IMG/VR virus record: IMGVR_UViG_3300032242_002454
Location: 140,626-204,625 of that record
Direction: 5' to 3' (one strand)
DNA: 64,000 nucleotides
The position numbers and the translations under genes are program-made. Below the pieces are notes generated by a model. That model was not told where the DNA came from. It made no database searches and saw only the letters and a program-made list of their open reading frames with translations. Shown one piece after another: positions 565 to 13,223 of the stretch (within the stretch, counting starts at the first letter, position 1; the number at the start of each line of letters is the position of its first letter).

Positions 565-928
565 ATACTACAAAGTTAAAAACATCAAATTGTTTGCTAA
601 AAGTATCAGAAAGAATGTTGCCCTTTGTTTCCCCAAATCTTATTCTGCTCAAATAGATGAGTTGATTTCAGTTGGTCAAACAGAAAATCTAATAAGACAG
701 TATGCTGAAATTTCTTCTAATGATGAATTTTTAATGAGTGAAGATAATTATAATCTGATATTTGACAATATTAAAGCTTGGCTATATAATAGTAGTCTAA
801 GTAAGCTTGCATCTTCTGGAGAGATAGAGTGTGCATGGGATGATGAAATAAATGAAATGATCTTTTGGCACACAAAATCTTCAGAAAAATTCCATATTGC
901 CTCTTGTTCTAGAAATAATTATGAGTAA
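554..928 (+). CDS. hypothetical protein, paralog family A
   Basis: LSKLASSGEIECAWDDEINEMIFW. Confidence 0.8.
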   Translation: MMTEYYKVKNIKLFAKSIRKNVALCFPKSYSAQIDELISVGQTENLIRQYAEISSNDEFLMSEDNYNLIFDNIKAWLYNSSLSKLASSGEIECAWDDEINEMIFWHTKSSEKFHIASCSRNNYE

Positions 929-1084: not shown

Positions 1085-1113
1085 TTGACAGTGGTTGGTC
1101 GATAGGATACAAT
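1085..1113 (+). promoter_or_regulatory. sigma70-type promoter for tRNA/tmRNA block
   Basis: TTGACA-N17-TACAAT, CGAT in spacer. Confidence 0.85.
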
Positions 1114-1239: not shown

Positions 1240-1440
1240 ATGAAACTACAGCCACTAACAGTAATTTTTGCTGGATTATTTCTAGTATCACTAGGATTTA
1301 ATATTCTATTGACTATACAGGTAAAAAAACTAGCTAATAAGCCTCCCAGAATTATTATAGAAAGAACACCAGAAATTCATATCAAACCAAAAGTTTGGGG
1401 GTATACTAAAGAATGGGCTAGTAAAGGTATCGACAGGTAA
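1240..1440 (+). CDS. small single-TM membrane protein
   Basis: Hydrophobic N-terminus; last 26 nt overlap tmRNA 5' end. Confidence 0.55.
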   Translation: MKLQPLTVIFAGLFLVSLGFNILLTIQVKKLANKPPRIIIERTPEIHIKPKVWGYTKEWASKGIDR

Positions 1441-1764
1441 AATAGATATAGATGGCATCGACTGGTTAATCGACCGGCCAGTTTAAAAGTCGATTAAAAT
1501 TGTTAATTGGCGAAGTAACTCTCGCTCTCGCTGCCTAATTAATTAGGTAATGAGTGGGGCGGCATGAGCCTTATTACCAAATCATGCTGACTCCGATATT
1601 CGGATATGGTAGTCTTACCAGACATAAATAAGACTGATGATTGTACTCAATCTGACGCAGATAATTCTGATAGCTTTGTTGGTAGTGTGATAACAACCAA
1701 CTAACGATGTAGAAGTTTGTATTGATGTTTATTCTGGACGGCAGTTCGACTCTGCCCTAGTCCA
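1415..1764 (+). ncRNA. ssrA: tmRNA, tag (A)GEVTLALAA at 1509-1538
   Basis: Acceptor GGGCTAG/CTAGTCC-A with G3.U70, D-loop ending TCGAC, T arm GGCAG-TTCGACT-CTGCC, 350 nt, internal tag ending ALAA-TAA. Confidence 0.95.
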
Positions 1765-1771
1765 CTTAATT

Positions 1772-1819
1772 TAGCTCTTGTTCATATTTTGGTGTAAAGA
1801 TATGTACAGGAAATAACTA
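1772..1819 (+). promoter_or_regulatory. RBS-sequestering hairpin with GGTGTA in loop
   Basis: CTTGT.CATATTTT-[GGTGTA]-AAGATATG.ACAGG. Confidence 0.7.
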
Positions 1820-2352
1820 TGAAAACTAATACATCTGTTGATTGTGCATATTGTGGTAAAAAAGTAGTAAAATTAGCTTCAGAAGTAAAAAGACGAAGGA
1901 AAGTAGGAAAAGATAAGTTTTATTGTAATAATAATTGTTCTGGTAAGCATAAGGCTGTTTATGTTATGCCATATAAGGATAATTTCAAAAAAACAAAATA
2001 TACTAGACAACCAGATAAGTTTGCTAATTTTAGATGGTATATAAAAAATGTCATCAAAAATTCTAAAAAACGTAATCAGGAATATGATATAGATCTAGAA
2101 TATTTGAATCAATTATGGGAAAACCAACTTGGAGTCTGTCCATTTACTAAACAGAAATTAGAACTCAGAACTCACAGCTATAAAAATAAGAAACATCCAT
2201 ATTCAGCTTCTTTAGATAGAATAGATAATACAAAAGGCTATATCAAAGGGAATATAAGATTTGTTGCTTTGATATTCAATTACGCAAAGAACACATTTAA
2301 CGATCAACAAGTTTTAGATTTTTGTCAAAACACAGTTTTAAGTATATCATGA
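1819..2352 (+). CDS. free-standing HNH-type homing endonuclease with N-terminal Zn finger
   Basis: CxxC...CxxxC; CPFT...SLDRIDNTKGYIKGNIRFV. Confidence 0.8.
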   Translation: MKTNTSVDCAYCGKKVVKLASEVKRRRKVGKDKFYCNNNCSGKHKAVYVMPYKDNFKKTKYTRQPDKFANFRWYIKNVIKNSKKRNQEYDIDLEYLNQLWENQLGVCPFTKQKLELRTHSYKNKKHPYSASLDRIDNTKGYIKGNIRFVALIFNYAKNTFNDQQVLDFCQNTVLSIS

Positions 2353-2915
2353 TAAATCCTAATGACGTAATTTTACATACTATAGATGCAAAATTTACAC
2401 AACTTATAATCTCTAATGCTAAAAAAGCAGAGATTGGAGGAAAATCTCAAATTAGAAATTCTAGTAAAAGATTATCTAATTTAGCAGAAGATCAGTTGGT
2501 CGGTCAAATATCTACATATTGTGGATCAATGATACTAACTGGTTCTCCAGAAGGATATATTCAAGCAAGAGATAAAGCAAATGCTACTCCTTTGGCTGGA
2601 GATAATGGACTAGATATAGTTGGTCTACCTAATGTGGATATTAAAGGTAGTTTGATGAGGTATTCTAATAATCCCCTAAATTACAGACTATTAGTTAGAC
2701 CAAAAGAAAGACACGAAAACTGGATTTATGTATTAGCATTAGTTCCAAAAGAAAGACCGTATAAAACTTATCTTGTGGGATGGGCTAATGACAATGATCT
2801 TCCATCAGAACCATATAATGGAGAGATAATATCTTTACATGGTGCATATGTTATTGAGGCTAGAAACTTAAGAAAAATTGAAGAATTAATTTCTCTTCAA
2901 CATAATTATGTCTAG
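2349..2915 (+). CDS. hypothetical protein, possible PD-(D/E)xK fold
   Basis: DNGLD....VDIK motif; YLVGW. Confidence 0.55.
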   Translation: MINPNDVILHTIDAKFTQLIISNAKKAEIGGKSQIRNSSKRLSNLAEDQLVGQISTYCGSMILTGSPEGYIQARDKANATPLAGDNGLDIVGLPNVDIKGSLMRYSNNPLNYRLLVRPKERHENWIYVLALVPKERPYKTYLVGWANDNDLPSEPYNGEIISLHGAYVIEARNLRKIEELISLQHNYV

Positions 2916-3333
2916 AAAAATTTGCATTTACTGTGGTAAAAGGAAAAATGCCAAGTCTTTTGCTAGACATATTGGACATAAAGATAATCTGGACAGTAGA
3001 TGCAGAAAGTGCGTTAAACAACATACTAAGATTAGAAATAAACTAAGGAAAAAGGCTCCTCAAAAGCCAGATGGTTGTGAGTGTTGTTTTTGTAGTCCAG
3101 ATAAATGGCACCTAGATCATGACCATGTTTATCATACCTTTAGGGGATGGTTATGTGAAACTTGTAATATAGGGATAGGAAAATTAGGAGATAATTTAGA
3201 AGGTATTGTTGCTGCTTTGAAATATTTATCAGTAAGAAGTAAGGTTGAAGATCAAGCTGTGCTAAATCACATTATTCAAGGCGTGGTTTTTTCTTTAAAC
3301 CATTTGCTAGAGAAAAGACGAAATGATGCTTGA
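2908..3333 (+). CDS. recombination endonuclease VII-like nuclease
   Basis: CECC...HLDHDH...RGWLCETCNIGIG. Confidence 0.85.
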   Translation: MSRKICIYCGKRKNAKSFARHIGHKDNLDSRCRKCVKQHTKIRNKLRKKAPQKPDGCECCFCSPDKWHLDHDHVYHTFRGWLCETCNIGIGKLGDNLEGIVAALKYLSVRSKVEDQAVLNHIIQGVVFSLNHLLEKRRNDA

Positions 3334-3358
3334 CAACAGCATTACCGTATGCTATACT
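3330..3358 (+). promoter_or_regulatory. sigma70-type promoter
   Basis: TTGACA-N17-TATACT. Confidence 0.85.
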
Positions 3359-3383
3359 TGGGAAAACACAGGAGAAATTGGAA

Positions 3384-4682
3384 ATGTCATTTGAGCATCT
3401 TAATGGTTTTGTTCGTGATCTGAAAGCAACTAGTAGTACACTTGATAAAGTTGGAATTATTGAGGATTATACCTCTTCCAATCAGGCTGGAGCAGATTTT
3501 ATCAAAAAGATTTTGCTCTATACTTATCATCCTCTTTGGCAGTATAATGTGACCAGCGATAATCTCAAAAAGAAATCTTCACTCAGAGGACAATCTTTTA
3601 AGACTGTTTTTGATTTGCTAGATTCTTTGAAGAACAGAGAAATCACAGGTCACGATGCTATTGGAGCAGTTAATACTTTTATTGACAATAATGGATACGA
3701 AGAACTCATCCACTGTATTATTGATAAGGATTTGAAAACCCGTGCTGGAGATAAGTTAATCAATAAGGCTATTCCAGATCACATTCCAACATTTAGCGTT
3801 GCATTAGCGGACAAGTATGTTCCTAAAATTGTAGACTGGAAGGATGGATGGTATGTTAGCAGGAAGATCGACGGTGCTAGATGTATTGCTATTGTTGACA
3901 GTAATGGTAATACTACCTTTTATTCCCGCACGGGAAAAAACTTTGATACTCTTGACGTTGTTAGCGGTGGGATTAAAGCTTTGGGACTTACTAATGTAAT
4001 TCTTGATGGAGAACTTTGTCTTGTTGATGAAGATGGTAATGAGGATTTTCAAGGAGTAATGAAAGAACTTCGCAAGAAGGATCATACTATTCCTAATCCT
4101 TCATATAAGATTTTTGATATGATTACTCATGATGAATTTTATAGTCAGAAGGGAGAACATAATAGACCCTTTGGTATCAGACTCAAGAATCTTACAGAAG
4201 TTATGAAAAAGAATGAATGTCCATGCCTAACACTATTGGATCAGTCCTTGATTAAGGACGAAAACCATTTTCAAGAATTTGTCAAAGAATCTACTCAGAA
4301 TGGTTGGGAGGGACTTATGCTTCGTGCAGATACTCCTTATAAGGGTAAGCGATCAAAAGACCTTCTCAAATATAAATCATTCTTTGATGACGAATATGAA
4401 GTTCTAGATACTGAAATGGGGCCGTTCCGCTATGTTAAAGATGGTGCAGAGTGCGAGGAGATTATGTTGAGTTGTGTTATGATTCAACATAAGGGTCATA
4501 CTGTCAGGGTTGGTTCTGGTTTTAGTATTGATCAAAGACAAGAGTTTTATAAGAATCCTAAGAAGATTTTGGGCAAAATAATTACTGTCCAATACTTTGA
4601 AGAAACAGAAAATGAAAAGGGTGGTATTAGCCTAAGATTTCCGACATTTAAAATTTTGCATGGGGATGAGAGGGATATTTGA
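3384..4682 (+). CDS. ATP-dependent DNA ligase
   Basis: KIDGAR adenylation motif, LDGEL, EGLMLR, LLKYK, VGSG, SLRFP; start after GGAG. Confidence 0.95.
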   Translation: MSFEHLNGFVRDLKATSSTLDKVGIIEDYTSSNQAGADFIKKILLYTYHPLWQYNVTSDNLKKKSSLRGQSFKTVFDLLDSLKNREITGHDAIGAVNTFIDNNGYEELIHCIIDKDLKTRAGDKLINKAIPDHIPTFSVALADKYVPKIVDWKDGWYVSRKIDGARCIAIVDSNGNTTFYSRTGKNFDTLDVVSGGIKALGLTNVILDGELCLVDEDGNEDFQGVMKELRKKDHTIPNPSYKIFDMITHDEFYSQKGEHNRPFGIRLKNLTEVMKKNECPCLTLLDQSLIKDENHFQEFVKESTQNGWEGLMLRADTPYKGKRSKDLLKYKSFFDDEYEVLDTEMGPFRYVKDGAECEEIMLSCVMIQHKGHTVRVGSGFSIDQRQEFYKNPKKILGKIITVQYFEETENEKGGISLRFPTFKILHGDERDI

Positions 4683-4739
4683 TTATTGGTTCCAATTAAG
4701 AGCGGTGTATAAAAATGTCCCGCCTCAAAGGAGCCTACC

Positions 4740-5165
4740 ATGCACAAGATTGTTATACGGTCAATTTTTTATCACTGGCTATTTTTATTTGTCGGTGTTG
4801 CTATAGGATTTATCTGCAACTCAGAATATGTTGGAGAAAAAGCTGTTGTTATAGAAAGATCAATTAATAATATCTTTTTCCCTATAGAATATAATGAGCA
4901 GATAGAAAATTATGTTAAATGGATGGGTAAAAATAGGATACATTCTGAATTAGGATATCCGCATGATTTTCAAATTCTTGAAGATGTTGTAAAGGGCGAG
5001 GAATATTATTGGGCTATAGCGAAATATACAGATGTAAAAACTGGACAAGAAATTAAAACTATAGTTAGTACAAAAATAAGATGGCGACCTTGGGAATATA
5101 ATTATCATACCAAGAAATTTGATAGCATCGTGGAAGAAAAAAGGCTAAGTCAGGATAAAAACTAA
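4740..5165 (+). CDS. membrane-anchored hypothetical protein
   Basis: N-terminal TM; GGAG RBS; GGTGTA at 4704. Confidence 0.7.
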   Translation: MHKIVIRSIFYHWLFLFVGVAIGFICNSEYVGEKAVVIERSINNIFFPIEYNEQIENYVKWMGKNRIHSELGYPHDFQILEDVVKGEEYYWAIAKYTDVKTGQEIKTIVSTKIRWRPWEYNYHTKKFDSIVEEKRLSQDKN

Positions 5166-5176
5166 AGAGCAGTGGC

Positions 5177-5205
5177 TTGACAAGACGATAGGACTAGTGT
5201 ACAAT
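5177..5205 (+). promoter_or_regulatory. sigma70-type promoter
   Basis: TTGACA-N17-TACAAT, CGAT in spacer. Confidence 0.85.
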
Positions 5206-5241
5206 CACAGCATACACTTTGGAAACAAACTTGGAGTTGAA

Positions 5242-5952
5242 ATGTCTGACCTAATCCAGCAAGATCGAATTGAAAAAAAGCCTGTTGTTATGAGTACCAG
5301 CAAGGCCGATGAATTTTTTAAGAATTTTCCCAAGGACAAGGTTGTTGCTTATAAAGATTATTGGGAAACTGTTCGTCCCAAGACTGATGAAGATATTTTT
5401 CGTCGCTATCTTTTTGCTTATTGCTCAGTTCACACCACTTGGCAAGGTAATGTCAAAGGATATAATGCTATTAAGAATTTTAGCGAATGGGTAGATAGCA
5501 AAGAAATTCTTTTGGAAAAACTTCATAAGAGTGGCGTCGGTCTACACAATAATCGCACCACTTATATCTGGGATTTTAGTACCAAGTTTTGGGCTAATCC
5601 TAAAGACTTTTATTTGACTACCAAGAAGTATCATGTTAAGAAACGAGACAGTATCCTTAATAAGATTAGTGGGATTGGTCTGGCTAAAATTAGCTTTGCT
5701 CTTGAAATGATCCATCCTAATGAGGCAAGAGTATTGTGCGGAGATATTCACCAATTGAGACTTTACGATGTCGAGGCTCTTAAGTATAATAAAAGTAAGT
5801 CTGGCTCAGAGATTTATAAAAAGATGGAGCGTCACTGGATGGTGAATTGTGGAAAGCTTAAAGTTCCATCGTATGTTGCCCGATCAATCTATTGGGATGA
5901 TCTGCAAAAGAAAGAAGATAGTCGTTACTGGAGTTATGTTCTGGAGAACTAA
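5242..5952 (+). CDS. HhH-family N-glycosylase/AP lyase (Ogg2-like)
   Basis: HhH ISGIGLAKISFAL and downstream DIHQLR. Confidence 0.7.
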   Translation: MSDLIQQDRIEKKPVVMSTSKADEFFKNFPKDKVVAYKDYWETVRPKTDEDIFRRYLFAYCSVHTTWQGNVKGYNAIKNFSEWVDSKEILLEKLHKSGVGLHNNRTTYIWDFSTKFWANPKDFYLTTKKYHVKKRDSILNKISGIGLAKISFALEMIHPNEARVLCGDIHQLRLYDVEALKYNKSKSGSEIYKKMERHWMVNCGKLKVPSYVARSIYWDDLQKKEDSRYWSYVLEN

Positions 5953-5954
5953 TT

Positions 5955-6080
5955 ATGCAGAATGGTAAAGGTTCTAAAAGACGAGTCAGTTTAGTTTCTC
6001 AAGAAACTTGGGATAAAAACTACGAAAGAATTTTTAGAAAGAAAAAAGATGGGAAGCGTAACGAATCTAAAAGAAAATAA
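5955..6080 (+). CDS. small basic protein (MQNGKGSKRR...)
   Basis: 41-aa ORF with GGAG RBS, below ORF-track cutoff. Confidence 0.6.
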   Translation: MQNGKGSKRRVSLVSQETWDKNYERIFRKKKDGKRNESKRK

Positions 6081-6327
6081 AACAATTTTCATTCCGTGTT
6101 CTTGTAAGAGTGAAATTTTAATGATCGAATATGATCATGAAATAGATATGGCTGATCTGGCAATATTTGAACATTATACAAATTATAGCAATAAGATGTC
6201 ATTATGGCAGAGACTACGATATTGTTTTCAGGTTTTGGTATATAAAAAACCCTATTCTGATCAGATGGTGCTAGACAAAAAACAATTAAAAGATTTGCAA
6301 AAATTCCTGAGTGGACTTAGCCTTTAA
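6049..6327 (+). CDS. hypothetical protein
   Basis: ORF in operon. Confidence 0.7.
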   Translation: MGSVTNLKENKTIFIPCSCKSEILMIEYDHEIDMADLAIFEHYTNYSNKMSLWQRLRYCFQVLVYKKPYSDQMVLDKKQLKDLQKFLSGLSL

Positions 6328-6372
6328 GGTGTATATTATAAGGTTTCCTAACTTATAACAGGGAGGCTAATT

Positions 6373-6588
6373 ATGGTCGTTAGAACAGCAGTAGAATTCA
6401 TGAATGATCAATTAGCTGATAGAGTGAAGGTCTTACAAAAAGCTTTAAACCAAGCAGAAAATATTATAACCACTCTAGAAAAAGAAAACAACAATCTAAA
6501 AGACGTTCTTAATAATCTAACGTCAGAAAATAAGGAAGATTATATGCTTAATAGCGAGGCTTTTAATGAGCCAGTGTTTACGGTCTAA
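6373..6588 (+). CDS. coiled-coil protein
   Basis: GGAGG RBS, heptads, GGTGTA at 6328. Confidence 0.7.
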   Translation: MVVRTAVEFMNDQLADRVKVLQKALNQAENIITTLEKENNNLKDVLNNLTSENKEDYMLNSEAFNEPVFTV

Positions 6589-6844
6589 AAATAAAAGAGT
6601 AATAACACAAATTGGTGAGAATGAATATTTGGTTGAAGGCGAAAGTGATTGGGCTAGATTTGGTTGTCAATCAGATATATCAATAATAACTTCCGCTAAT
6701 TTAGAAGGTGGCCCATTTTTATTAGTGGGCGATTCTTTTTTGGGTAAAGGTAAAATCTCAGCAATACAAAATATTGACAGTGGCAGAGATGGCTATATAA
6801 TAATCAAAGTTACCTTATTCTCTAAAAAGGAAAAACATGATTAA
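6566..6844 (+). CDS. hypothetical protein
   Basis: ORF in operon. Confidence 0.65.
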   Translation: MSQCLRSKNKRVITQIGENEYLVEGESDWARFGCQSDISIITSANLEGGPFLLVGDSFLGKGKISAIQNIDSGRDGYIIIKVTLFSKKEKHD

Positions 6845-6936
6845 TGAATTGATTCCTATGATCGGATTTAATCAAGCTATGTTAATAGCTGGATATAATG
6901 AATATCAAACTCAACAAATAATTAAAGGGTCTACTT

Positions 6937-7122
6937 ATGAGCCAACTTCACAAGAGTAATAAGAATAGAGTTTTATTTGGTGTTTGTGGAGGACTAGCAG
7001 AAAATCTAGGAGTAGATGCCGCCGTACTAAGAATAGGATTTGTTCTTGGAGCAATTTTTACTGGAAGTATTTTGTTTTGGGTTTACTTACTTTTTGCTTT
7101 AGTATTACCTACACAGGATTGA
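6937..7122 (+). CDS. pspC: PspC-domain membrane protein
   Basis: NRVLFGVCGGLAENLGVD...LR, TM, Y..ALVLP. Confidence 0.9.
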   Translation: MSQLHKSNKNRVLFGVCGGLAENLGVDAAVLRIGFVLGAIFTGSILFWVYLLFALVLPTQD

Positions 7123-7126
7123 TTCA

Positions 7127-7693
7127 ATGGACAGGATAGAAGGTGGTCAGAAAATTTTCTTTATCTCTGATCTTCACCTTGGACATAAAAATATCATAGG
7201 ATATTGTAATCGTCCATTCTCCACTGGAGAAGAAATGGATTCTCAAATTCTTTCTTCCATAAACGAAAAAGTCTCCCAAAACGATATTCTTTATGTTCTA
7301 GGAGATTTTTGCCATAAAGGTGGAGTTGCTCAATCTTATAGAGAAAGAATAGCTTGTGAAAATATTCATATGATTCTAGGTAATCATGATGAACCAACTA
7401 AATTTTCCACAGGATTTTCTAGTGTTGGCTATCAGAAAATGATTCTATATAAAAATCAAAAAATATTTATGTGTCACTATCCCATGCGAAGCTGGCCTAG
7501 TAGTCACAAAAAAAGCTGGATGCTTTATGGTCATGTTCATAGCAGATTCCATCGTGAGGACGTTGTTTCTGGTAGCCTCACGCTTGATGTAGGCGTGGAT
7601 AATAAAAGAGATGGGGTGACATTCGGTACTCCTTGGAGTTTTAAAGACGTTCAACAACAATTTCTGGCGAGAGCGAAAAATTTTTCAAGGTAG
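7127..7693 (+). CDS. calcineurin-like metallophosphoesterase
   Basis: DLH, GD, GNHD, CHYP, GHVH, DVGVD. Confidence 0.92.
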   Translation: MDRIEGGQKIFFISDLHLGHKNIIGYCNRPFSTGEEMDSQILSSINEKVSQNDILYVLGDFCHKGGVAQSYRERIACENIHMILGNHDEPTKFSTGFSSVGYQKMILYKNQKIFMCHYPMRSWPSSHKKSWMLYGHVHSRFHREDVVSGSLTLDVGVDNKRDGVTFGTPWSFKDVQQQFLARAKNFSR

Positions 7694-7697
7694 CCTG

Positions 7698-7726
7698 TTG
7701 ACAATGCCGATACCATACTGTACAAT
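7698..7726 (+). promoter_or_regulatory. sigma70-type promoter
   Basis: TTGACA-N17-TACAAT, GCCGAT in spacer. Confidence 0.85.
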
Positions 7727-7805
7727 CAAAGGAACAACGAGGGTAAGATCAGTCGCCTGACTGAGCCTGTCGTTGAAAGATTGGTTAAGAATTTGGAGGT
7801 TGATT

Positions 7806-8090
7806 ATGGCTGAAGTTACTACTACTGATAAGCAGACCCGTGTTCGTTGCAGTGATGATCAGTTTCTTGAGGCGGTTTTTAACAGCAGGACTTATGCTGA
7901 GATTGCTACTAAGACAGGTCAGAAGGTTGCTAGTACGATGGCTCGTTATGCTCGTACAAAGGCTGCTCTGGCTAAGAAGGGAATTGAACTTCCTGCTATG
8001 GAACGAGCAAAGCCTATTAAGACTATTGATAATGTCGAAGCTATGGCTGAGACAGTTCGCCGTCTAAAGGCTGCTCATTCTAACGGCTGA
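7806..8090 (+). CDS. small basic HTH-like DNA-binding protein
   Basis: GGAGG RBS; TYAEIATKTGQKVAST. Confidence 0.65.
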   Translation: MAEVTTTDKQTRVRCSDDQFLEAVFNSRTYAEIATKTGQKVASTMARYARTKAALAKKGIELPAMERAKPIKTIDNVEAMAETVRRLKAAHSNG

Positions 8091-8108
8091 GTTTAGTTCA
8101 AACCAAAT

Positions 8109-8192
8109 GCTTCCAACTACATCCCTCATAAATATTGTTAGAGACAACATAGACAAAATCTAACCAATCGTTATGATATGTAGCTTGGAAGT
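8109..8192 (+). ncRNA. putative structured RNA
   Basis: GCTTCCAACTACAT pairs with ATGTAGCTTGGAAGT; TCATAA/TTATGA; inner TAGA/TCTA hairpin. Confidence 0.45.
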
Positions 8193-8197
8193 ATAAT

Positions 8198-8270
8198 GGC
8201 CCAGTAACCCAATGGCAGAGGTAGCGGACTTAAAATCCGTCAAGTATCAGTTCGAGTCTGATCTGGGCCA
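8198..8270 (+). tRNA. tRNA-Leu(UAA), short variable loop
   Basis: GGCCCAG/CTGGGCC-A; anticodon arm GCGGA-CTTAAAA-TCCGT; T arm ATCAG-TTCGAGT-CTGAT. Confidence 0.92.
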
Positions 8271-8304
8271 CTTTAATGTGGTGTAAAAAGTAGACAAAAT
8301 ATAT

Positions 8305-8345
8305 CTATCTTGGTGTATGTAATTGTGGCACATACAAGGAGATAG
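8305..8345 (+). promoter_or_regulatory. RBS-sequestering hairpin containing GGTGTA
   Basis: CTATCT/AGATAG and TGTATGT/ACATACA stems cover AAGGAG. Confidence 0.75.
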
Positions 8346-8347
8346 TT

Positions 8348-8818
8348 ATGAAAAAATGTTTGAAATGCTCCAAAGAATTTAAGAACAGGGTTGTGATTGA
8401 TGGTGTTGAAAGGAATATACATAAAAGAAGTTATTGTTTAGAATGTTCCCCATTTGGAAAACGTAATACTAAAAGACTACATATTCCACCAAGAGATACG
8501 AATAGCACAAAACACTGTACAAAATGCAGTCGTAAGTTTAAATGGACAAAAAACAATGTATGTTCCACATGTAGGACATTTAAAAGAAGAAATAATCAAA
8601 GAATAAAGTCAATAGAATATCTTGGTGGTAAATGTACTGGCTGTGGAAATAAAGATCATGATGTTTTGACTTTTCACCATAAGAACCCTAAAAATAAAAA
8701 ATTTACCTTATGCCAAAGTTGGCACAGAGCTTGGAAAATACTTTTGTCAGAGATTAAAAAGTGCGAGCTACTTTGTGCTAATTGTCACATGAAACATCAC
8801 AGAAAAGAAATGCTATGA
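8348..8818 (+). CDS. free-standing HNH homing endonuclease with Zn fingers
   Basis: Multiple CxxC; LGGKC..C...FHHKNP...CELLCANCH. Confidence 0.88.
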   Translation: MKKCLKCSKEFKNRVVIDGVERNIHKRSYCLECSPFGKRNTKRLHIPPRDTNSTKHCTKCSRKFKWTKNNVCSTCRTFKRRNNQRIKSIEYLGGKCTGCGNKDHDVLTFHHKNPKNKKFTLCQSWHRAWKILLSEIKKCELLCANCHMKHHRKEML

Positions 8819-9036
8819 CATTCGACCACTGGCTAAATGAAATTGAAGGATATAGCGTTAGACACGAAAGAGCTATGACCGACATAAGAAACTGTGTTGC
8901 AAAAGGAGAAACTGACGATATAATTAAGTGGCTGATGGCAGCTTATGCTATGGGCCATGAACAGGGTTATGATGTTGGTCATTATGATGGTAAGAAAAAC
9001 TGCAAACAACATTTTGATGAATATGGATGGGTATAA
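8815..9036 (+). CDS. hypothetical protein
   Basis: ATGA-coupled ORF. Confidence 0.65.
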   Translation: MTFDHWLNEIEGYSVRHERAMTDIRNCVAKGETDDIIKWLMAAYAMGHEQGYDVGHYDGKKNCKQHFDEYGWV

Positions 9037-9038
9037 TT

Positions 9039-9251
9039 ATGGAAATCCACAACAAAAAACATATCACAATGACTCCTGACGATGTTAAAAAAGCTATTGA
9101 GAGATATATTGATGATGAAATCGTTAGTACTGAAACTGGTTGTGATATTAAGTTTATTGTACATGATATTTATCAGAAAGATAGTTTGACCGGATATTAT
9201 AAGTCAGAATTTGTTGGTGCTGAAGTTGTGGTGCGTCCTAATGAGAGCTGA
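9039..9251 (+). CDS. hypothetical protein
   Basis: ORF in operon. Confidence 0.6.
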   Translation: MEIHNKKHITMTPDDVKKAIERYIDDEIVSTETGCDIKFIVHDIYQKDSLTGYYKSEFVGAEVVVRPNES

Positions 9252-9474
9252 ATTTTTAATGGGCAAAGCATCTAAAGATAGCCCATATATTCCAAAAAGA
9301 GGAGAAACTATCCAGTATGATAGACTGGGTGATGGAACTTGGCTAACTATTCATGTTGGTGATGGTAAAACTCCAGTTAAAGATCTCCCTGCAATAGCTG
9401 ATTATGATATTCGTGAACGAGTTAGGATCTTGGAAGAAAAAATAGCAAAATTAGAAAATGATCGAAGAATATGA
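9241..9474 (+). CDS. hypothetical protein with hyaluronidase/tail-like GDG motif
   Basis: PKRGE...IHVGDGKTPVKDLP. Confidence 0.55.
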   Translation: MRAEFLMGKASKDSPYIPKRGETIQYDRLGDGTWLTIHVGDGKTPVKDLPAIADYDIRERVRILEEKIAKLENDRRI

Positions 9475-9757
9475 AAACTGGGAAGATAGTATAAGAAGAA
9501 CTTTTATAGAATTGGCAAATTATATGGAACAACATTCTAATCCTATTGAATATTTAATTGAATTTGCTTGGGCAAATGGTGCTGATCGTTTTGTTGTAAA
9601 TAATGCCAAGGATGAATTGAAAAAACTTCAAGAAAATAATATTGCTAATCCTGTTGCTTGGGCTAGAATAAATAAACGTGGGGATTTGTTTGATCCTCGT
9701 TTATGTAATAATATTCATGTTGATCAAAGTTCTGTGGTTCCACTATACAGGAAGTAA
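9458..9757 (+). CDS. hypothetical protein
   Basis: PVAW...VVPLY motif typical of phage early proteins. Confidence 0.65.
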   Translation: MIEEYENWEDSIRRTFIELANYMEQHSNPIEYLIEFAWANGADRFVVNNAKDELKKLQENNIANPVAWARINKRGDLFDPRLCNNIHVDQSSVVPLYRK

Positions 9758-9759
9758 AA

Positions 9760-10086
9760 ATGAGACCAAGAGGAAATAGATTGTGTCGAGCAGAAGTAAA
9801 AAATCATAATCCAAAATCTCCAATAGATACTTTTGTTCTTGTTACAGTAAGAGAATGTAATGATTGCGATGGAGGTACATACATTGATGAGATCAACACT
9901 GCTGCTCAATTTTTAGCAACTGAAAATGAATCATGTGATGAGCCTTTCTATCAGATTTATGGAAGAAGATACATGGACGATATAATGTCTGGTCCGATGT
10001 TTCTTGCAGAGTTTTATGACTTGGATAAAGCTCTCAATTTTCTATATTATTTAACTGGTGAAGAAGCCAAAGTTGTTTCTTACTAA
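9760..10086 (+). CDS. hypothetical protein
   Basis: ORF in operon. Confidence 0.65.
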   Translation: MRPRGNRLCRAEVKNHNPKSPIDTFVLVTVRECNDCDGGTYIDEINTAAQFLATENESCDEPFYQIYGRRYMDDIMSGPMFLAEFYDLDKALNFLYYLTGEEAKVVSY

Positions 10087-10087
10087 T

Positions 10088-10609
10088 ATGATTAATAGTA
10101 AATACAAAATTGATTTATCTGATTTTTATAGTGATGACGGTGGGTATTGTACACTATTTAAATTGCTTAATGAGCCATCACTAGGATTCAAAGAATTCAT
10201 TTCCAAATCTAGAGCAAAATATGCTAGGAGAATTCAGATAAGACTAAGTAAACTTAATCTTGCACCAAAAGTATATTCTAGAGTATGCAAGATGACTTAT
10301 AATGGATTTTTTCCGGGCAAAAAAAGTGGTTGGGGATATGTCACAGAATTAGCTAAAACTGGAAATAAAAAAGTTAGATTATGCAATATACAGAGATTGG
10401 TTGATGTTATTTACGATAGAACAAAATTAAAATTTTGGGACTGTCATTGGGCTAATCTTGGATATATTATAAGAAAAGGCAAAAGAAAATTGGTTTGTAT
10501 TGATACTGGTAAAGAAACTTGGGATGGTTATGCTAATTATTTTGGAAATATTGATCCTGGCCCAAAGTGTTCGTATTGTTTAAAATATAAATGTAGGTGT
10601 GTAGAATAA
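10088..10609 (+). CDS. minimal protein-kinase-like protein
   Basis: GFK, LAPKVY, catalytic-loop-like DCHWANLG, DFG-like IDTG. Confidence 0.65.
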   Translation: MINSKYKIDLSDFYSDDGGYCTLFKLLNEPSLGFKEFISKSRAKYARRIQIRLSKLNLAPKVYSRVCKMTYNGFFPGKKSGWGYVTELAKTGNKKVRLCNIQRLVDVIYDRTKLKFWDCHWANLGYIIRKGKRKLVCIDTGKETWDGYANYFGNIDPGPKCSYCLKYKCRCVE

Positions 10610-11496
10610 TGAAATATCTTATAGCTGGTGGTGCTGGTTTTATAGGTAGTCATATTGCAGATACTCTTTTAGATATGGGTCATGATGTTATAATTATTGA
10701 TAATCTATCTACAGGAAAAAAAAGTAACATACCTAATAGAGCTACTTTTGTAGAATTAGATATAGCTAAATCTCCTATAGAAATTTTATCATCTTTTTTT
10801 GATGGAGTAACCGCAGTATTCCATTGTGCCGCATTACCCAATGTTCAGTTTTCTATAGAACAACCTTTGGATTCTAATAAAGCTAATGTAGATACTACTA
10901 TTAAAATTTTAGAGTCTATGAGAATCAAAAAAATTAAGAAGATTATATACAGCAGTTCTTGTTCTATATATGGAGATGCTATACAGATACCTACTACTGA
11001 AAATGAAACTATTAAACCATTAAGCCCATACGCTTTACAGAAATATATTGGAGAAGAATACTGTTCCCTTTATTATAGGCTTTACAATATAGAATATGTT
11101 GCTTTGCGTTATTTTAATGTATATGGTGAACGAATGACTGATACTGGAGCTTATGTTAGTGTATTGAGTCACTTTTTAAGAGCTTACAAAAATAATCAGC
11201 CGTTAAATATTACTAATACTGGAGAACAAAAAAGAGATTTTGTATATGTAAAAGACATAGCCAAAGCAAATGTTTTGGCTGCATTAAAAAATATTGGTGG
11301 TGAAACTATATTAAACTTAGGATCAGGTAATAACTATTCTATAAATTCTATTGCTAGTTGGTTTAATCATAATATTGTTTATGGAGAATCTAGAATAGAA
11401 CCATTTGAAACTTTAGCTGACATAAATAAAGCTAAAAATATATTGAATTGGTTACCAAAAGTAAATTTAAAATCATGGGTAATGCAAAATATTTAA
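10609..11496 (+). CDS. NAD-dependent epimerase/dehydratase (GalE-like)
   Basis: GGAGFIG, YALQK, RYFNVYG, RDFVYV. Confidence 0.95.
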   Translation: MKYLIAGGAGFIGSHIADTLLDMGHDVIIIDNLSTGKKSNIPNRATFVELDIAKSPIEILSSFFDGVTAVFHCAALPNVQFSIEQPLDSNKANVDTTIKILESMRIKKIKKIIYSSSCSIYGDAIQIPTTENETIKPLSPYALQKYIGEEYCSLYYRLYNIEYVALRYFNVYGERMTDTGAYVSVLSHFLRAYKNNQPLNITNTGEQKRDFVYVKDIAKANVLAALKNIGGETILNLGSGNNYSINSIASWFNHNIVYGESRIEPFETLADINKAKNILNWLPKVNLKSWVMQNI

Positions 11497-11506
11497 GGAA
11501 ATTATA

Positions 11507-11857
11507 ATGCCATATATTAAAGAAGAAAATAGACTTACTCTTGATGAATGTATTGATCATATGGTGGTTTGTTTGAAAAATAGTGCTTTCAGAGCATCAT
11601 TTGATCCAAATAAAAATAATTATATGAAGGAAGAACTAAGTAATGAAGATGTTTTAGCTATAGTTGGAGATATTAATTACTGTATTTCTCGTGTTGTTTC
11701 TAAGCTAATGGGCAAGGTATCGTATTCTAAAATAGCAATGATTACAGGAGTATTAGAAAATATAAAGCAAGAGTTTTATCGTAGAATTGGTGTATCTTTA
11801 GAAGATAAGAAAATTATAGAAAATGGAGATATACCAGAATACAAAAGGTTATGCTAA
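11507..11857 (+). CDS. conserved phage hypothetical protein
   Basis: MPYIK...GDINY...EFYRR...ENGD. Confidence 0.75.
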   Translation: MPYIKEENRLTLDECIDHMVVCLKNSAFRASFDPNKNNYMKEELSNEDVLAIVGDINYCISRVVSKLMGKVSYSKIAMITGVLENIKQEFYRRIGVSLEDKKIIENGDIPEYKRLC

Positions 11858-12570
11858 AAAACACAAAAAAGAATGATTATTCATTAATCTCAAAAAAAGA
11901 ACTAGAAAAATTATTAAATGAAGGATTGAATTTTACAGAAATAGGTTCTCTTTATGGTAGAAATCTGCACTATATTAGAACGATATGTAAAAAATACAAT
12001 CTTAAAATTAAATCAAAGGCGACTGTCTGTTTAAACTGTCAAAAAAAGTTTAAGCATAAAGCAACCATCCCAGCCAAATACTGTTCCACAAAATGTCGAT
12101 CTGCACATTGGCCAAAAATAAATAAAGAAAAGCATAAAGAATTAGTTAAAAAATCTAGATTTAAGTGTCATCCAGTAAAATGCAGAAAATGTAACAATAA
12201 TATATCAGATAATAATAGAAAATCTGGTTTGGTTTACTGTAGTGATTTATGTAGAAAACAGAATAAGACGATATCTGATAAACAAAGTCGAGATAAAAAA
12301 TATAAACAATTTGGTCTTTACAAAATATCTATAGGATGTCAAAATTGCGGATATAATAAATGTTCTGGTTCTTTAGATTTTCATCATGTCAATCCACAAA
12401 CAAAATCGACTAGAATAAGCTGTGGACTCTGGAAAGCTAATACTGAAGTATTTCAAAAAGAACTGTTAAAATGTATATTACTATGTAAAAATTGTCATTA
12501 TGAAGCACATAATCAGATTCTTATTATAGAAGGAAATGAAGGACAATGGAATTGTATATACCAAAATTAA
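11851..12570 (+). CDS. free-standing HNH homing endonuclease
   Basis: HTH-like N-term, CxxC/CSxxC, GCQNCG...DFHHVNP...CILLCKNCH; same family as 8348. Confidence 0.88.
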   Translation: MLKNTKKNDYSLISKKELEKLLNEGLNFTEIGSLYGRNLHYIRTICKKYNLKIKSKATVCLNCQKKFKHKATIPAKYCSTKCRSAHWPKINKEKHKELVKKSRFKCHPVKCRKCNNNISDNNRKSGLVYCSDLCRKQNKTISDKQSRDKKYKQFGLYKISIGCQNCGYNKCSGSLDFHHVNPQTKSTRISCGLWKANTEVFQKELLKCILLCKNCHYEAHNQILIIEGNEGQWNCIYQN

Positions 12571-12580
12571 AGGTGTATAA

Positions 12581-12625
12581 ATTATTAAGAATGGCGATAT
12601 TAAAGAGTATAAACGCCTAAAATAA
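12581..12625 (+). pseudogene. displaced duplicate 3' end of gene 11507..11857
   Basis: Encodes IIKNGDIKEYKRLK* vs IIENGDIPEYKRLC* at 11813-11857. Confidence 0.85.
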
Positions 12626-12635
12626 AGAGGCCAAA

Positions 12636-12947
12636 ATGTCTAAAAATATTGATGATGTAATTAAAGAGGTAATGAAAAGCAATAAGGAGATTCATACTAT
12701 GGACGCTCATATCTCTAAAGACATTACCGATCTAAAAAAGAGCATCAAAAATATTGAGAATAAGATCAAAATGATAGATAATAAAATGGATCAAACCATA
12801 GATCTATTAAATACTTTCATTACTCTTATTACTGAACAGGATGATATAGATCTTGATGATGAAGAAGAGAATGAGGATTGGACTCCTTATGATCAACAAG
12901 AAGATTATCAAGCTGATGATGAAGATGAGGAAGAAGAACAATACTAA
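12636..12947 (+). CDS. coiled-coil protein with acidic tail
   Basis: GAGG RBS; GGTGTA at 12572. Confidence 0.75.
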   Translation: MSKNIDDVIKEVMKSNKEIHTMDAHISKDITDLKKSIKNIENKIKMIDNKMDQTIDLLNTFITLITEQDDIDLDDEEENEDWTPYDQQEDYQADDEDEEEEQY

Positions 12948-13198
12948 TGGCTAGTTTAGCTCTACTAGTAACAATAATTTTTTTATCTGTGCTAATAATA
13001 GGTCCAATTAGTTATATTCTATCATTATTTTCTTGGATGCCAAATTTAATCAAATGGATAATGGCAATAGTTTGTATTTTTGTTGGGGGTTGGGTTTGTT
13101 TTCTACCTATACCCTTTTTAAGAGCTTTGGGATTAATTGATATAGCAATAGGATTAAAGATCATATCGGATAGCACACAAAAGAAAAGTGATGCTTGA
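12947..13198 (+). CDS. multi-TM membrane protein
   Basis: Three hydrophobic segments. Confidence 0.7.
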   Translation: MASLALLVTIIFLSVLIIGPISYILSLFSWMPNLIKWIMAIVCIFVGGWVCFLPIPFLRALGLIDIAIGLKIISDSTQKKSDA

Positions 13199-13223
13199 CA
13201 AGACCGTATGCCGATGGTATACT
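13195..13223 (+). promoter_or_regulatory. sigma70-type promoter for rIIA
   Basis: TTGACA-N17-TATACT, GCCGAT in spacer. Confidence 0.88.

What the first reader, a model, noticed from the sequence alone, without database searches (positions are those of the whole stretch)
1772..11851. Three homing endonucleases each preceded by a hairpin that embeds the GGTGTA motif and covers an SD-like sequence
Seen: 1777-1810 is a stem with GGTGTA exactly as the loop and AGG of the RBS in the 3' arm. At 8305-8345 the CTATCT..TGTATGT/ACATACA..AGATAG stem covers AAGGAG. 11788-11800/11824-11836 is a 13-bp stem TGGTGTATCTTTA/TGGAGATATACCA; here the GGAG is ~22 nt from the ATG, so this case is weaker. Known: T4 I-TevI-type endonucleases are silenced on early read-through mRNA by an RBS hairpin, which is lost when a late promoter inside it fires. 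Inference: the same logic arose here with a different promoter, which also implies GGTGTA is a late promoter.
Basis: partly seen in the sequence, partly recalled or inferred. Interest (0 to 1): 0.7.

Follow-up and report, generated by a model that had tools for sequence, protein, structure and literature searches.

The report
Hairpin-plus-promoter switches on phage homing endonucleases
In an uncultured 205-kb freshwater phage, the mobile HNH endonuclease genes each carry a small control module, an RNA hairpin that hides the ribosome-binding site and has a phage-specific promoter-like motif (GGTGTAT) inside it, which matches the logic known from phage T4 but uses a different signal.

Summary
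All three hairpins fold as described (dG -13 to -18 kcal/mol, z -3.3 to -4.9), and all three ORFs are HNH endonucleases.

They behave as mobile genes. They are present only sporadically among 80 related phage contigs, and the cassette boundaries are exact. The hairpin and GGTGTA lie inside the inserted cassette.

Two further HNH genes elsewhere in the same genome carry the same module.

GGTGTAT is a genuine expression signal:
- 13 of its 24 coding-strand copies lie in the 7% of the genome that is intergenic (P about 1e-9).
- It precedes structural operons.
- It forms a back-to-back divergent pair at a strand switch.
- Reverse-oriented endonuclease genes in relatives carry their own copy.
- The phage encodes a sigma-like protein.

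Orthologous leaders keep the order anti-SD, GGTGTA, SD while the stem sequences differ. Hairpins that hide the SD are stronger in endonuclease genes co-oriented with their neighbours than in reverse-oriented ones.

The mechanism is therefore most likely the T4 I-TevI/segB/mobE type of switch. No transcription start has been mapped. "Late" timing is inferred only. Case 3 is atypical, because its hairpin lies inside a translated ORF and its start codon overlaps that ORF's stop.

Verdict: a new member of a known kind, with moderate interest.

The parts
1085..1113 (+). Sigma-70-type early promoter (TTGACA-17-TACAAT). It feeds tRNA-Ile, a 66-aa ORF, the tmRNA and, by read-through, HNH1.
   Evidence: no terminator-like site between it and 1819
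1415..1767 (+). Phage-encoded tmRNA. Its 3' end is the left border of the HNH1 cassette.
   Evidence: Rfam RF00023, 88.6 bits, E 1e-33
1773..2344 (+). HNH1 mobile cassette: hairpin, GGTGTA, SD and the ORF. It is absent as a block from relatives L015, L016 and L047. Borders are good to a few nt.
1776..1811 (+). Hairpin 1. The loop is GGUGUA (1791-1796) and the 3' arm holds the SD AGGA (1808-1811).
   Evidence: dG -13.2, z -3.25. P(SD paired) falls from 0.70 to 0.07 when the RNA starts 13 nt after the first G.
1819..2352 (+). HNH1 endonuclease (177 aa). Its stop overlaps the ATG of the next ORF (ATGA).
   Evidence: phrog_3322 at E 1e-22; present in 7 of the related loci
7698..7726 (+). Sigma-70-type early promoter that feeds ORF 7773-8090, tRNA-Leu and, by read-through, HNH2.
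8198..8271 (+). tRNA-Leu(UAA); left border of the HNH2 cassette.
8272..8814 (+). HNH2 mobile cassette. L020 has a 29-nt spacer here instead. L018, L055 and L058 have other, reverse-oriented HNH genes at the same site.
8280..8285 (+). Distal GGTGTA(A) copy, also kept in the L047/L048 orthologues.
8300..8350 (+). Hairpin 2. GGTGTAT (8312-8318) lies in the 5' arm. AAGGAG (8336-8341) and part of the ATG lie in the 3' arm.
   Evidence: dG -15.4, z -3.41. P(SD paired) falls from 0.82 to 0.14.
8348..8818 (+). HNH2 endonuclease (156 aa). Its stop overlaps the ATG of ORF 8815.
   Evidence: phrog_2255 at E 9e-30; present in 3 related loci
11507..11857 (+). DUF6899 ORF. Its last ~25 codons are recoded in alleles that carry the endonuclease gene.
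   Evidence: Pfam PF21840 at E 8e-23; comparison of alleles
11787..11837 (+). Hairpin 3 (14 bp), inside the DUF6899 ORF, with GGTGTAT at 11789-11795. A weaker extension (about 11762-11783 with 11840-11855) can cover the AAGG and ATG of HNH3.
   Evidence: Both arms exist only in the endonuclease-carrying alleles, the window and L020.
11851..12570 (+). HNH3 endonuclease (239 aa). Its ATG overlaps the stop of DUF6899 (ATGCTAA).
   Evidence: phrog_2255 and phrog_3106 at E 1e-14; found in only one related locus, L020
12572..12578 (+). GGTGTAT directly after the HNH3 stop; the putative promoter of ORF 12636-12947.
12590..12625 (+). Leftover, now non-coding copy of the original DUF6899 3' end, displaced by the HNH3 cassette.
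   Evidence: identical in sense to the 3' end of the endonuclease-free alleles L014, L015, L017 and L019
4704..4710 (+). GGTGTAT before the non-endonuclease ORF 4740-5165. Homology among relatives starts exactly at this motif.
6328..6334 (+). GGTGTAT before the non-endonuclease ORF 6373-6588, kept in 26 distinct orthologous leaders.

Best explanation
The three ORFs are free-standing HNH homing endonuclease genes. They inserted just downstream of a tmRNA, just downstream of a tRNA, and at the end of a small gene, all inside early transcription units driven by host-type sigma-70 promoters.

Each cassette brings its own control module, in this order: an anti-Shine-Dalgarno 5' arm, the motif GGTGTA(T), and a 3' arm that holds the Shine-Dalgarno sequence.

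On long read-through transcripts the arms pair, and the endonuclease is not translated. Later, RNA polymerase directed by a phage factor starts a few nucleotides downstream of GGTGTAT. That factor is most likely the sigma-like protein at genome 98950-99606. The resulting RNA lacks the 5' arm, the ribosome site is free, and the endonuclease is made.

Shown by computation: the hairpins, their place inside the mobile cassette, the genome-wide behaviour of the motif, and conservation of the layout.

Inferred: that GGTGTAT is a promoter, where transcription starts, the timing, and the effect on translation.
For: 1. The hairpins are real, and removing the 5' part abolishes them.

2. The HNH genes are sporadic among 80 relatives with exact indels, and hairpin plus GGTGTA lie inside the inserted block.

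3. In this genome, 5 of 6 HNH genes have GGTGTA within 65 nt upstream, against 19 of 254 other genes (Fisher P 2.5e-5). Two of the five lie outside the window, at genome 116282 and 113552.

4. Starting the RNA 13 nt after the first G lowers P(SD paired) by 0.42-0.68 for the five HNH genes. For 15 other genes preceded by GGTGTA the drop is at most 0.30.

5. HNH1 orthologues (58-94% aa identity) and HNH2 orthologues (78-85%) all keep the anti-SD, GGTGTA, SD layout while the stem sequences differ.

6. In relatives, 58 of 93 endonuclease-like ORFs from at least 8 families, including a GIY-YIG family, have GGTGTA within 100 nt upstream. The figure for other ORFs is 107 of 1160.

7. Co-oriented endonuclease leaders lose more SD pairing on truncation than reverse-oriented ones (0.41 against 0.17, n = 19 each, P 7e-4). 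This is expected if the hairpin guards against read-through.

8. Signs that GGTGTAT is a promoter:
- 13 of 24 coding-strand copies are intergenic, and single mismatches are not enriched.
- It precedes the putative capsid operon. A copy follows the terminator-like hairpin after that operon, and a copy precedes a tail-fibre-like gene.
- Two copies sit back to back, 20 nt apart, at a divergent strand switch (genome 76384-76416).
- Reverse-oriented endonuclease genes carry their own copy.
- Homology blocks among relatives begin exactly at the motif.

9. The phage encodes a sigma-like protein. It gives weak Sigma70_r2 hits, some homologues are named sigma-24 by JGI, and the top 50 PDB fold matches are all sigma factors.

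10. Strong sigma-70-type promoters lie upstream of HNH1 and HNH2 with no terminator in between.

11. [quoted passage not shown]
Against: - No transcription start site is known, and the metatranscriptome contigs did not reach any 5' end.
- The purine-T signal seen 13-14 nt after the first G in this genome was not reproduced in relatives.
- The sigma assignment rests on weak scores (Pfam below cut-off, Foldseek E about 0.03, model pLDDT 68), and nothing links it to this motif.
- HNH3 does not fit cleanly. Its hairpin is inside a translated ORF, its start overlaps that ORF's stop, and its only orthologue (L020) keeps just 8 bp of the stem.
- One endonuclease-like family (22 copies after the ligase gene) and a sixth HNH gene in this genome lack the motif.
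- Counts across relatives are not independent events.
- The motif also precedes non-structural genes, so 'late' is not established.
Confidence: 0.62

Rival explanations
1. GGUGUA(U) acts in the RNA rather than the DNA, as the site of a phage or host endoribonuclease. Cutting there would separate the anti-SD arm from the SD arm and so activate translation after processing.
For: Strand-specific enrichment in intergenic regions and the position between the anti-SD and SD arms fit this reading equally well. No start site has been mapped.
Against: - Reverse-oriented endonuclease genes, which have no obvious upstream transcript, carry their own copy.
- Two copies sit back to back at a divergent strand switch, where no upstream RNA exists to be cut.
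- A copy follows a terminator-like site.
- Homology blocks begin at the motif.
Confidence: 0.13
2. The hairpins serve the neighbouring stable RNAs (tmRNA and tRNA-Leu), as terminators, 3'-processing signals or RNase III sites. They cover the endonuclease SD only by accident.
For: HNH1, HNH2 and HNH4 start 40-80 nt after a tmRNA or tRNA gene, and HNH5 abuts a tRNA.
Against: - Relatives without the endonuclease gene lack the hairpins, although they have the same tmRNA or tRNA.
- No U-tract follows any of the hairpins, and the terminator scan does not list them.
- This reading does not explain the invariant GGTGTA or the SD complementarity kept across diverged orthologues.
Confidence: 0.07
3. GGTGTA and the stems are a DNA-level feature of the mobile elements, such as a recognition or operator site for the endonucleases or an N4-style hairpin promoter, rather than an RNA switch.
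For: The association with endonuclease genes is very strong. In T4, I-TevI binds an operator that overlaps its own late promoter (PMC2988022).
Against: - The motif is shared by at least 8 unrelated endonuclease families, which should have different specificities.
- It also precedes about 15 ordinary genes that have no hairpin.
- The stems vary in length, and the motif sits in different places within them (loop, or 5' arm).
Confidence: 0.06
4. Chance: AT-rich phage leaders fold easily, and a 6-mer recurs by accident.
For: The plain count of GGTGTA in the window is not above expectation.
Against: - Fold z-scores are -3.3 to -4.9.
- Intergenic enrichment has P about 1e-9.
- 5 of 6 HNH genes carry the motif.
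- The layout is conserved across orthologues.
Confidence: 0.02

Closest known systems
T4-type control of homing endonuclease genes by an RBS-sequestering hairpin with an embedded late or middle promoter (I-TevI, I-TevII, I-TevIII, T4 segB, Aeromonas phage Aeh1 mobE; review PMC2988022)
   Same: - The endonuclease gene lies inside an earlier polycistronic unit.
- A stable hairpin pairs the SD.
- A promoter-like element is placed so that its transcript lacks the 5' arm.
- segB, like HNH2 and HNH4 here, sits among tRNA genes.
- A promoter for the downstream host gene is supplied at the end of the cassette (12572), as described for seg and mob genes.
   Different: - The element is GGTGTAT, not the T4 late TATAAATA box.
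- The phage is only distantly related to T4-like phages (rIIA at most 37% identical).
- The presumed reader is a sigma-70-family protein with a Cys-rich insert, not shown to be gp55/gp33-like.
- Nothing here has been tested experimentally.
- HNH3 has its hairpin inside a translated ORF.
Single-element promoters read by a phage-encoded sigma factor (phiEco32 gp36, consensus tAATGTAtA, start 6-8 bp downstream; PMC8948821)
   Same: - One short conserved element with no -35 box.
- The two motifs share the core TGTAT.
- The motif stands before late genes.
- The phage has its own sigma-like gene.
   Different: - The upstream half differs (GGTG against tAAT).
- No homology between the two sigma proteins has been shown.
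- Start sites and sigma dependence are not tested here.
T4 late genes silenced on early mRNA by RBS hairpins (soc, e, 49 and others; PMC2988022)
   Same: The same read-through versus late-start logic.
   Different: In this genome the effect is specific to the endonuclease genes. The 15 other genes preceded by GGTGTA show little change in SD pairing.

Membership tests
Free-standing HNH homing endonuclease gene | Protein belongs to the HNH / His-Me finger nuclease family | tested here: met
   PHROG HNH/endonuclease families at E 1e-14 to 1e-30 for all three. HNH-type motifs are visible in the translations. Pfam itself gave no hit for the three.
Free-standing HNH homing endonuclease gene | Presence/absence polymorphism among close relatives, with precise borders at a conserved site | tested here: met
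   HNH1 is in 7, HNH2 in 3 and HNH3 in 1 of the related loci. Exact indels lie next to the tmRNA, the tRNA-Leu and the DUF6899 3' end.
Free-standing HNH homing endonuclease gene | Cleaves the endonuclease-free allele and spreads by gene conversion | not testable with these tools
   Only indirect signs are available. These are a more diverged tract flanking HNH3 (74-80% identity against at least 86% in the flanking DNA just downstream) and a recoded target end.
T4-type hairpin plus internal late promoter switch | The gene lies on a longer transcript from an upstream early or middle promoter | tested here: inconclusive
   Near-consensus sigma-70-type promoters at 1085 and 7698, with no terminator-like site before the endonuclease genes. 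No RNA data.
T4-type hairpin plus internal late promoter switch | A stable RNA structure pairs the Shine-Dalgarno sequence | tested here: met
   Predicted only. P(SD paired) is 0.70-0.82 for HNH1 and HNH2, with z -3.3 and -3.4. For HNH3 the main stem misses the start region, and only a weak extension covers it.
T4-type hairpin plus internal late promoter switch | A promoter is placed so that its transcript lacks the 5' arm | tested here: inconclusive
   GGTGTA(T) always lies between the anti-SD and SD arms. Several independent features point to a promoter. No start site has been mapped.
T4-type hairpin plus internal late promoter switch | Translation occurs only from the short, late transcript | not testable with these tools
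   Needs reporters or infection time courses.
Single-element phage-sigma promoter (phiEco32 gp36 type) | A short conserved element without a -35 box, upstream of middle or late genes | tested here: met
   GGTGTAT is invariant and there is no upstream conservation in 24 sites. It precedes the capsid operon and a tail-fibre-like gene.
Single-element phage-sigma promoter (phiEco32 gp36 type) | The phage encodes the sigma factor that reads it | tested here: inconclusive
   A sigma-like protein exists. Its link to the motif has not been tested.
Intrinsic terminator | GC-rich stem followed by a U-tract | tested here: not met
   None of the three hairpins is followed by a T-run, and none is listed by the scan.

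The most novel reading that the evidence does not exclude
GGTGTAT is the middle/late promoter of a large, widespread lineage of uncultured freshwater jumbo phages, read by their own Cys-rich sigma factor. Homing endonuclease genes of at least eight families have each acquired it. They add an anti-SD arm only when they land co-oriented with early transcription. That would make promoter plus hairpin a portable, orientation-tuned regulatory module of mobile genes.
Probability: 0.45. Interest if true: 0.55.

Novelty: new member of a known kind. Interest (0 to 1): 0.45.

Why it matters
The hairpin-plus-late-promoter control of homing endonucleases was worked out in T4 and a few relatives. It appears here again, in several copies and several endonuclease families, in a distant uncultured phage lineage with a different promoter signal. 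That argues the control is a general, repeatedly selected way for selfish nucleases to live inside early phage operons.

The work also yields a candidate promoter motif, a candidate sigma factor and a two-class promoter map for a common freshwater jumbo-phage group that has no cultured member. Finally, the difference between co-oriented and reverse-oriented endonuclease genes gives a testable prediction.

Tried and rejected
- **Close phage relatives.** Megablast of 12 kb against the INPHARED phage records gave no match.
- **Pfam on the three endonucleases.** No hit. PHROGs was needed.
- **Consensus RNA fold of six HNH1 leaders.** RNAalifold gave no consensus structure, because MAFFT misaligned the shifting stems. 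I used per-sequence folds instead.
- **Metatranscriptomes.** Four lake RNA runs hold contigs over the capsid operon (L009 9026-11835). None reaches the 5' end near the motif at L009 12186, and contigs have no direction, so there is no start-site information.
- **Downstream start signal.** A purine-T pair 13-14 nt after the first G looked significant in this genome but was not reproduced in 125 leaders from relatives. I dropped it.
- **Sigma-like protein against the PDB by sequence.** A profile of the family gave no hit. Only the fold search pointed to sigma factors, and weakly.
- **Single-subunit RNA polymerase (PF00940).** None found, but the control genomes did not ring either, so this says nothing.
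- **Terminator reading of the hairpins.** Rejected, because no T-run follows them.
- **N4-like hairpin promoter.** Rejected, because GGTGTAT sites before ordinary genes and before reverse-oriented endonuclease genes lack hairpins.


Full report
**What the window is.** It is the right-hand 64 kb of a complete 204,625-bp virus record with direct terminal repeats (34.5% GC), assembled from lake metagenomes. No close relative exists among deposited phage genomes. Its rIIA protein is at most about 37% identical to those of T4-like and other enterobacterial phages. Genes run rightwards from about 113.7 kb to the end, which includes the whole window. A leftward block at 17-99.6 kb holds the structural genes: terminase, a putative major head protein, head-decoration and tail-fibre-like proteins, and several giant ORFs.

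**Checking the observation.** The three hairpins fold as described. Hairpin 1 (1776-1811) has dG -13.2 and z -3.25. Hairpin 2 (8300-8350) has dG -15.4 and z -3.41. Hairpin 3 (11787-11837) has dG -17.9 and z -4.86. At most 2 of 200 shuffles fold as well as any of them. RNAs that start just after GGTGTA have essentially no structure.
- In hairpin 1, GGUGUA is exactly the loop and AGGA (1808-1811) is in the 3' arm.
- In hairpin 2, GGAG (8338-8341) and part of the start codon are paired.

The three ORFs match PHROG HNH/endonuclease families. Pfam alone did not recognise them.

**They are mobile, and the control module travels with them.** A search with the neighbouring DNA ligase returned 80 related contigs with 74-98% ligase identity. 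HNH1 homologues occur in seven of them, HNH2 in three and HNH3 in one. The borders are exact.
- **HNH1.** In L015, L016 and L047 the tmRNA 3' end is followed after 9 nt by the ATG of the next ORF. In the window about 570 bp (1773-2344) are inserted there, and the insert begins with the hairpin.
- **HNH2.** The cassette fills 8272-8814, between the tRNA-Leu 3' end and the ATG of ORF 8815. L020 has a 29-nt spacer instead. L018, L055 and L058 carry other HNH genes in reverse orientation at the same spot.
- **HNH3.** The cassette replaced the 3' end of the DUF6899 gene with a recoded version. Both arms of hairpin 3 and its GGTGTA exist only in the endonuclease-carrying alleles (the window and L020). 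The cassette supplies a new GGTGTAT (12572) just after its stop, and it left a now non-coding copy of the original gene end at 12590-12625.

So the hairpins belong to the endonuclease cassettes, not to the tmRNA or tRNA.

**More instances in the same genome.** Profile searches found two more HNH genes outside the window. One lies at genome 116282-116809, between tRNA-Thr and tRNA-Gln. The other lies at 113055-113552 on the minus strand, abutting tRNA-Arg. Both have GGTGTAT 26-30 nt upstream and an anti-SD segment 5' of it. A sixth HNH-like gene (14373-15164) lacks the motif. Five of six HNH genes, against 19 of 254 other genes, gives Fisher P = 2.5e-5.

**Is GGTGTA(T) a promoter?**
- *Count and position.* The plain count is unremarkable, but 13 of 24 coding-strand GGTGTAT copies lie in the 6.9% of the genome that is intergenic (P about 1e-9). 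No single-mismatch variant reaches P < 1e-3 (AGTGTAT 3 of 9, P 0.02).
- *No -35 box.* No conservation is seen upstream of the motif.
- *A separate early class.* The genome has a quite different and very clear class of sigma-70-type promoters: TTGACA, a conserved GCCGATA in the spacer, then TAnAnT. They are dense between about 100 and 157 kb and stand before rIIA, rIIB, tRNAs and many small ORFs.
- *Placement.* GGTGTAT instead precedes the operon that ends in the putative capsid gene. A copy follows a terminator-like hairpin right after that operon, and another precedes a tail-fibre-like gene. Others precede ribonucleotide reductase, PhoH, a trypsin-like protease and several small ORFs.
- *Strand switch.* At the one internal strand switch of the structural block, two copies stand back to back 20 nt apart, each 30-33 nt from its own SD and ATG. 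No upstream RNA exists there to be processed.
- *Relatives.* Reverse-oriented endonuclease genes carry their own copy. Before ORF 4740, homology between genomes begins exactly at the motif.
- *A candidate reader.* The phage encodes a 218-aa protein at the head of the structural block. It gives weak Sigma70_r2 matches. It has 1534 homologues, some named sigma-24 by JGI. Its predicted fold (mean pLDDT 68) has sigma factors as all of its top 50 PDB matches (probability about 0.9, E about 0.03).

Together these points make a promoter the best reading. Single-element promoters of this sort are known for the phiEco32 sigma gp36 (tAATGTAtA, start 6-8 bp downstream; PMC8948821). No start site is mapped here. 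Lake metatranscriptome contigs cover part of the capsid operon but not its 5' end.

**Does the hairpin behave like a read-through guard?**
- *Truncation test.* I compared the probability that the SD region is paired in a leader that includes 45 nt upstream of the motif with the same leader starting 13 nt after the first G. The five HNH genes drop by 0.42-0.68. Fifteen ordinary GGTGTA-preceded genes drop by at most 0.30, so the two sets separate completely.
- *Orthologues.* Orthologous HNH1 leaders from genomes with 58-94% protein identity all keep an anti-SD arm, then GGTGTA, then an SD arm. The arms have different sequences, and the motif sits in the loop in some and in the 5' arm in others. 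HNH2 orthologues behave alike.
- *Relatives as a whole.* 58 of 93 endonuclease-like ORFs, including a GIY-YIG family, have the motif within 100 nt upstream, against 107 of 1160 other ORFs. One family of 22 copies directly after the ligase gene never has it.
- *Orientation.* Among motif-bearing endonuclease leaders, those co-oriented with the surrounding genes lose 0.41 of SD pairing on truncation and reverse-oriented ones lose 0.17 (19 distinct leaders each, P = 7e-4). The same trend holds within families. A hairpin that exists to silence read-through transcripts should behave this way. These leaders are related, so the P values overstate independence.

**Case 3.** Its main stem lies within the last 25 codons of a translated gene, and the HNH3 ATG overlaps that gene's stop. 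Ribosomes finishing DUF6899 could therefore open the stem and reinitiate. A weaker extension of the helix can pair the AAGG and ATG of HNH3 (P 0.71 against 0.10), but the only orthologue keeps just 8 bp. I rate this case as a likely promoter inside a cassette-borne recoded gene end, with an uncertain role for the hairpin.

[quoted passage not shown] There a hairpin hides the RBS on early or middle read-through RNA, and a late promoter inside the hairpin gives a transcript without the 5' arm (PMC2988022). Supplying a promoter for the displaced downstream gene at the end of the cassette is also described there. What is new is the lineage, the motif, the presumed sigma, the number of independent endonuclease families that share the module, and the orientation effect. 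I therefore file it as a new member of a known kind. Membership is supported for the structural features and untested for the functional ones.

**Rivals.** The main rival is an RNA-level cleavage site at GGUGUA, which would give the same release of the SD. The divergent motif pair, the reverse-oriented genes and the copy after a terminator argue against it, but only the chemistry of the 5' ends can exclude it. A role for the hairpins in tmRNA or tRNA maturation or termination is contradicted, because relatives without the endonuclease gene lack them and no U-tract follows them. A DNA-level recognition site for the endonucleases is unlikely given eight unrelated families and about 15 ordinary genes with the motif. 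An added autorepression layer, as in I-TevI, cannot be excluded.

Noticed in passing
window 1415-1767 (+): A phage-encoded tmRNA (Rfam RF00023, 88.6 bits, E 1e-33) that ARAGORN did not report. It sits behind a tRNA-Ile(UAU) and a 66-aa ORF under an early promoter.
   Followed up: partly
L014:11142-11335 (also L017, L018, L020, L047, L055, L058); window 8198-8271: In many relatives the tRNA-Leu(UAA) gene is interrupted in the anticodon loop by a group I intron (RF00028, 62.4 bits in L014). The window's copy and that of L015 have no intron.
   Followed up: partly
window 762-790, 1085-1113, 3330-3358, 5177-5205, 6774-6801, 7698-7726, 13195-13223; many more at genome 100-157 kb: The early promoters are near-consensus sigma-70 type. 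Many share a conserved GCCGATA 2-3 nt after the -35 box, which resembles the -10 element of sigma-28 (FliA) promoters. Its meaning is unknown.
   Followed up: no
window 8272-8814 and the same site in L018, L055, L058, L047, L071: The spacer after tRNA-Leu is an insertion hot spot. At least three different HNH families occupy it in different relatives, in either orientation.
   Followed up: partly
window 4683-4703 and relatives (e.g. L017:11347-12650, L019:11358-12959): The gap between the ligase gene and GGTGTAT 4704 is a second variable spot. In relatives it holds 0.4-1.6 kb of unrelated genes, including HNH genes.
   Followed up: partly
genome 76384-76416 (L008:16384-16416): Two GGTGTAT motifs stand back to back, 20 nt apart, at a divergent strand switch inside the structural block.
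   Followed up: yes
genome 98950-99606 (-) (L009:18950-19606): Sigma-like protein with four invariant cysteines (C97, C100, C114, C123) between the sigma-2-like and C-terminal helical parts. It has 1534 metagenomic homologues.
   Followed up: partly
genome 3437-5311 and 6201-7832 (+): The DNA polymerase is encoded in two separate ORFs. Between them lie a 65-aa ORF and an exonuclease-like ORF.
   Followed up: no
genome about 100-120 kb: A repeated element with CTTACG/CGTAAG arms around a GC-rich core (GGCCGCCCG-like) recurs before many early promoters. ORF calling in this higher-GC stretch is unreliable.
   Followed up: no
window 2908-3333 (+): An endonuclease VII-like ORF (phrog_2633), conserved in relatives, with a structured leader (10th of 259 for SD pairing) but no GGTGTA. 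T4 gene 49 is regulated by an RBS hairpin.
   Followed up: no
relatives L014, L015, L017, L019 at the position matching window about 11745: Alleles without the endonuclease gene have a GGTGTAT inside the DUF6899 coding sequence (codons T-G-V). In the window it is removed by synonymous changes (ACA GGA GTA). The HNH3 cassette may have replaced an internal promoter with its own two copies.
   Followed up: partly
genome 14373-15164 (+): A sixth HNH-like gene (phrog_559) in the replication block. It overlaps the preceding ORF and has no GGTGTA or hairpin.
   Followed up: partly
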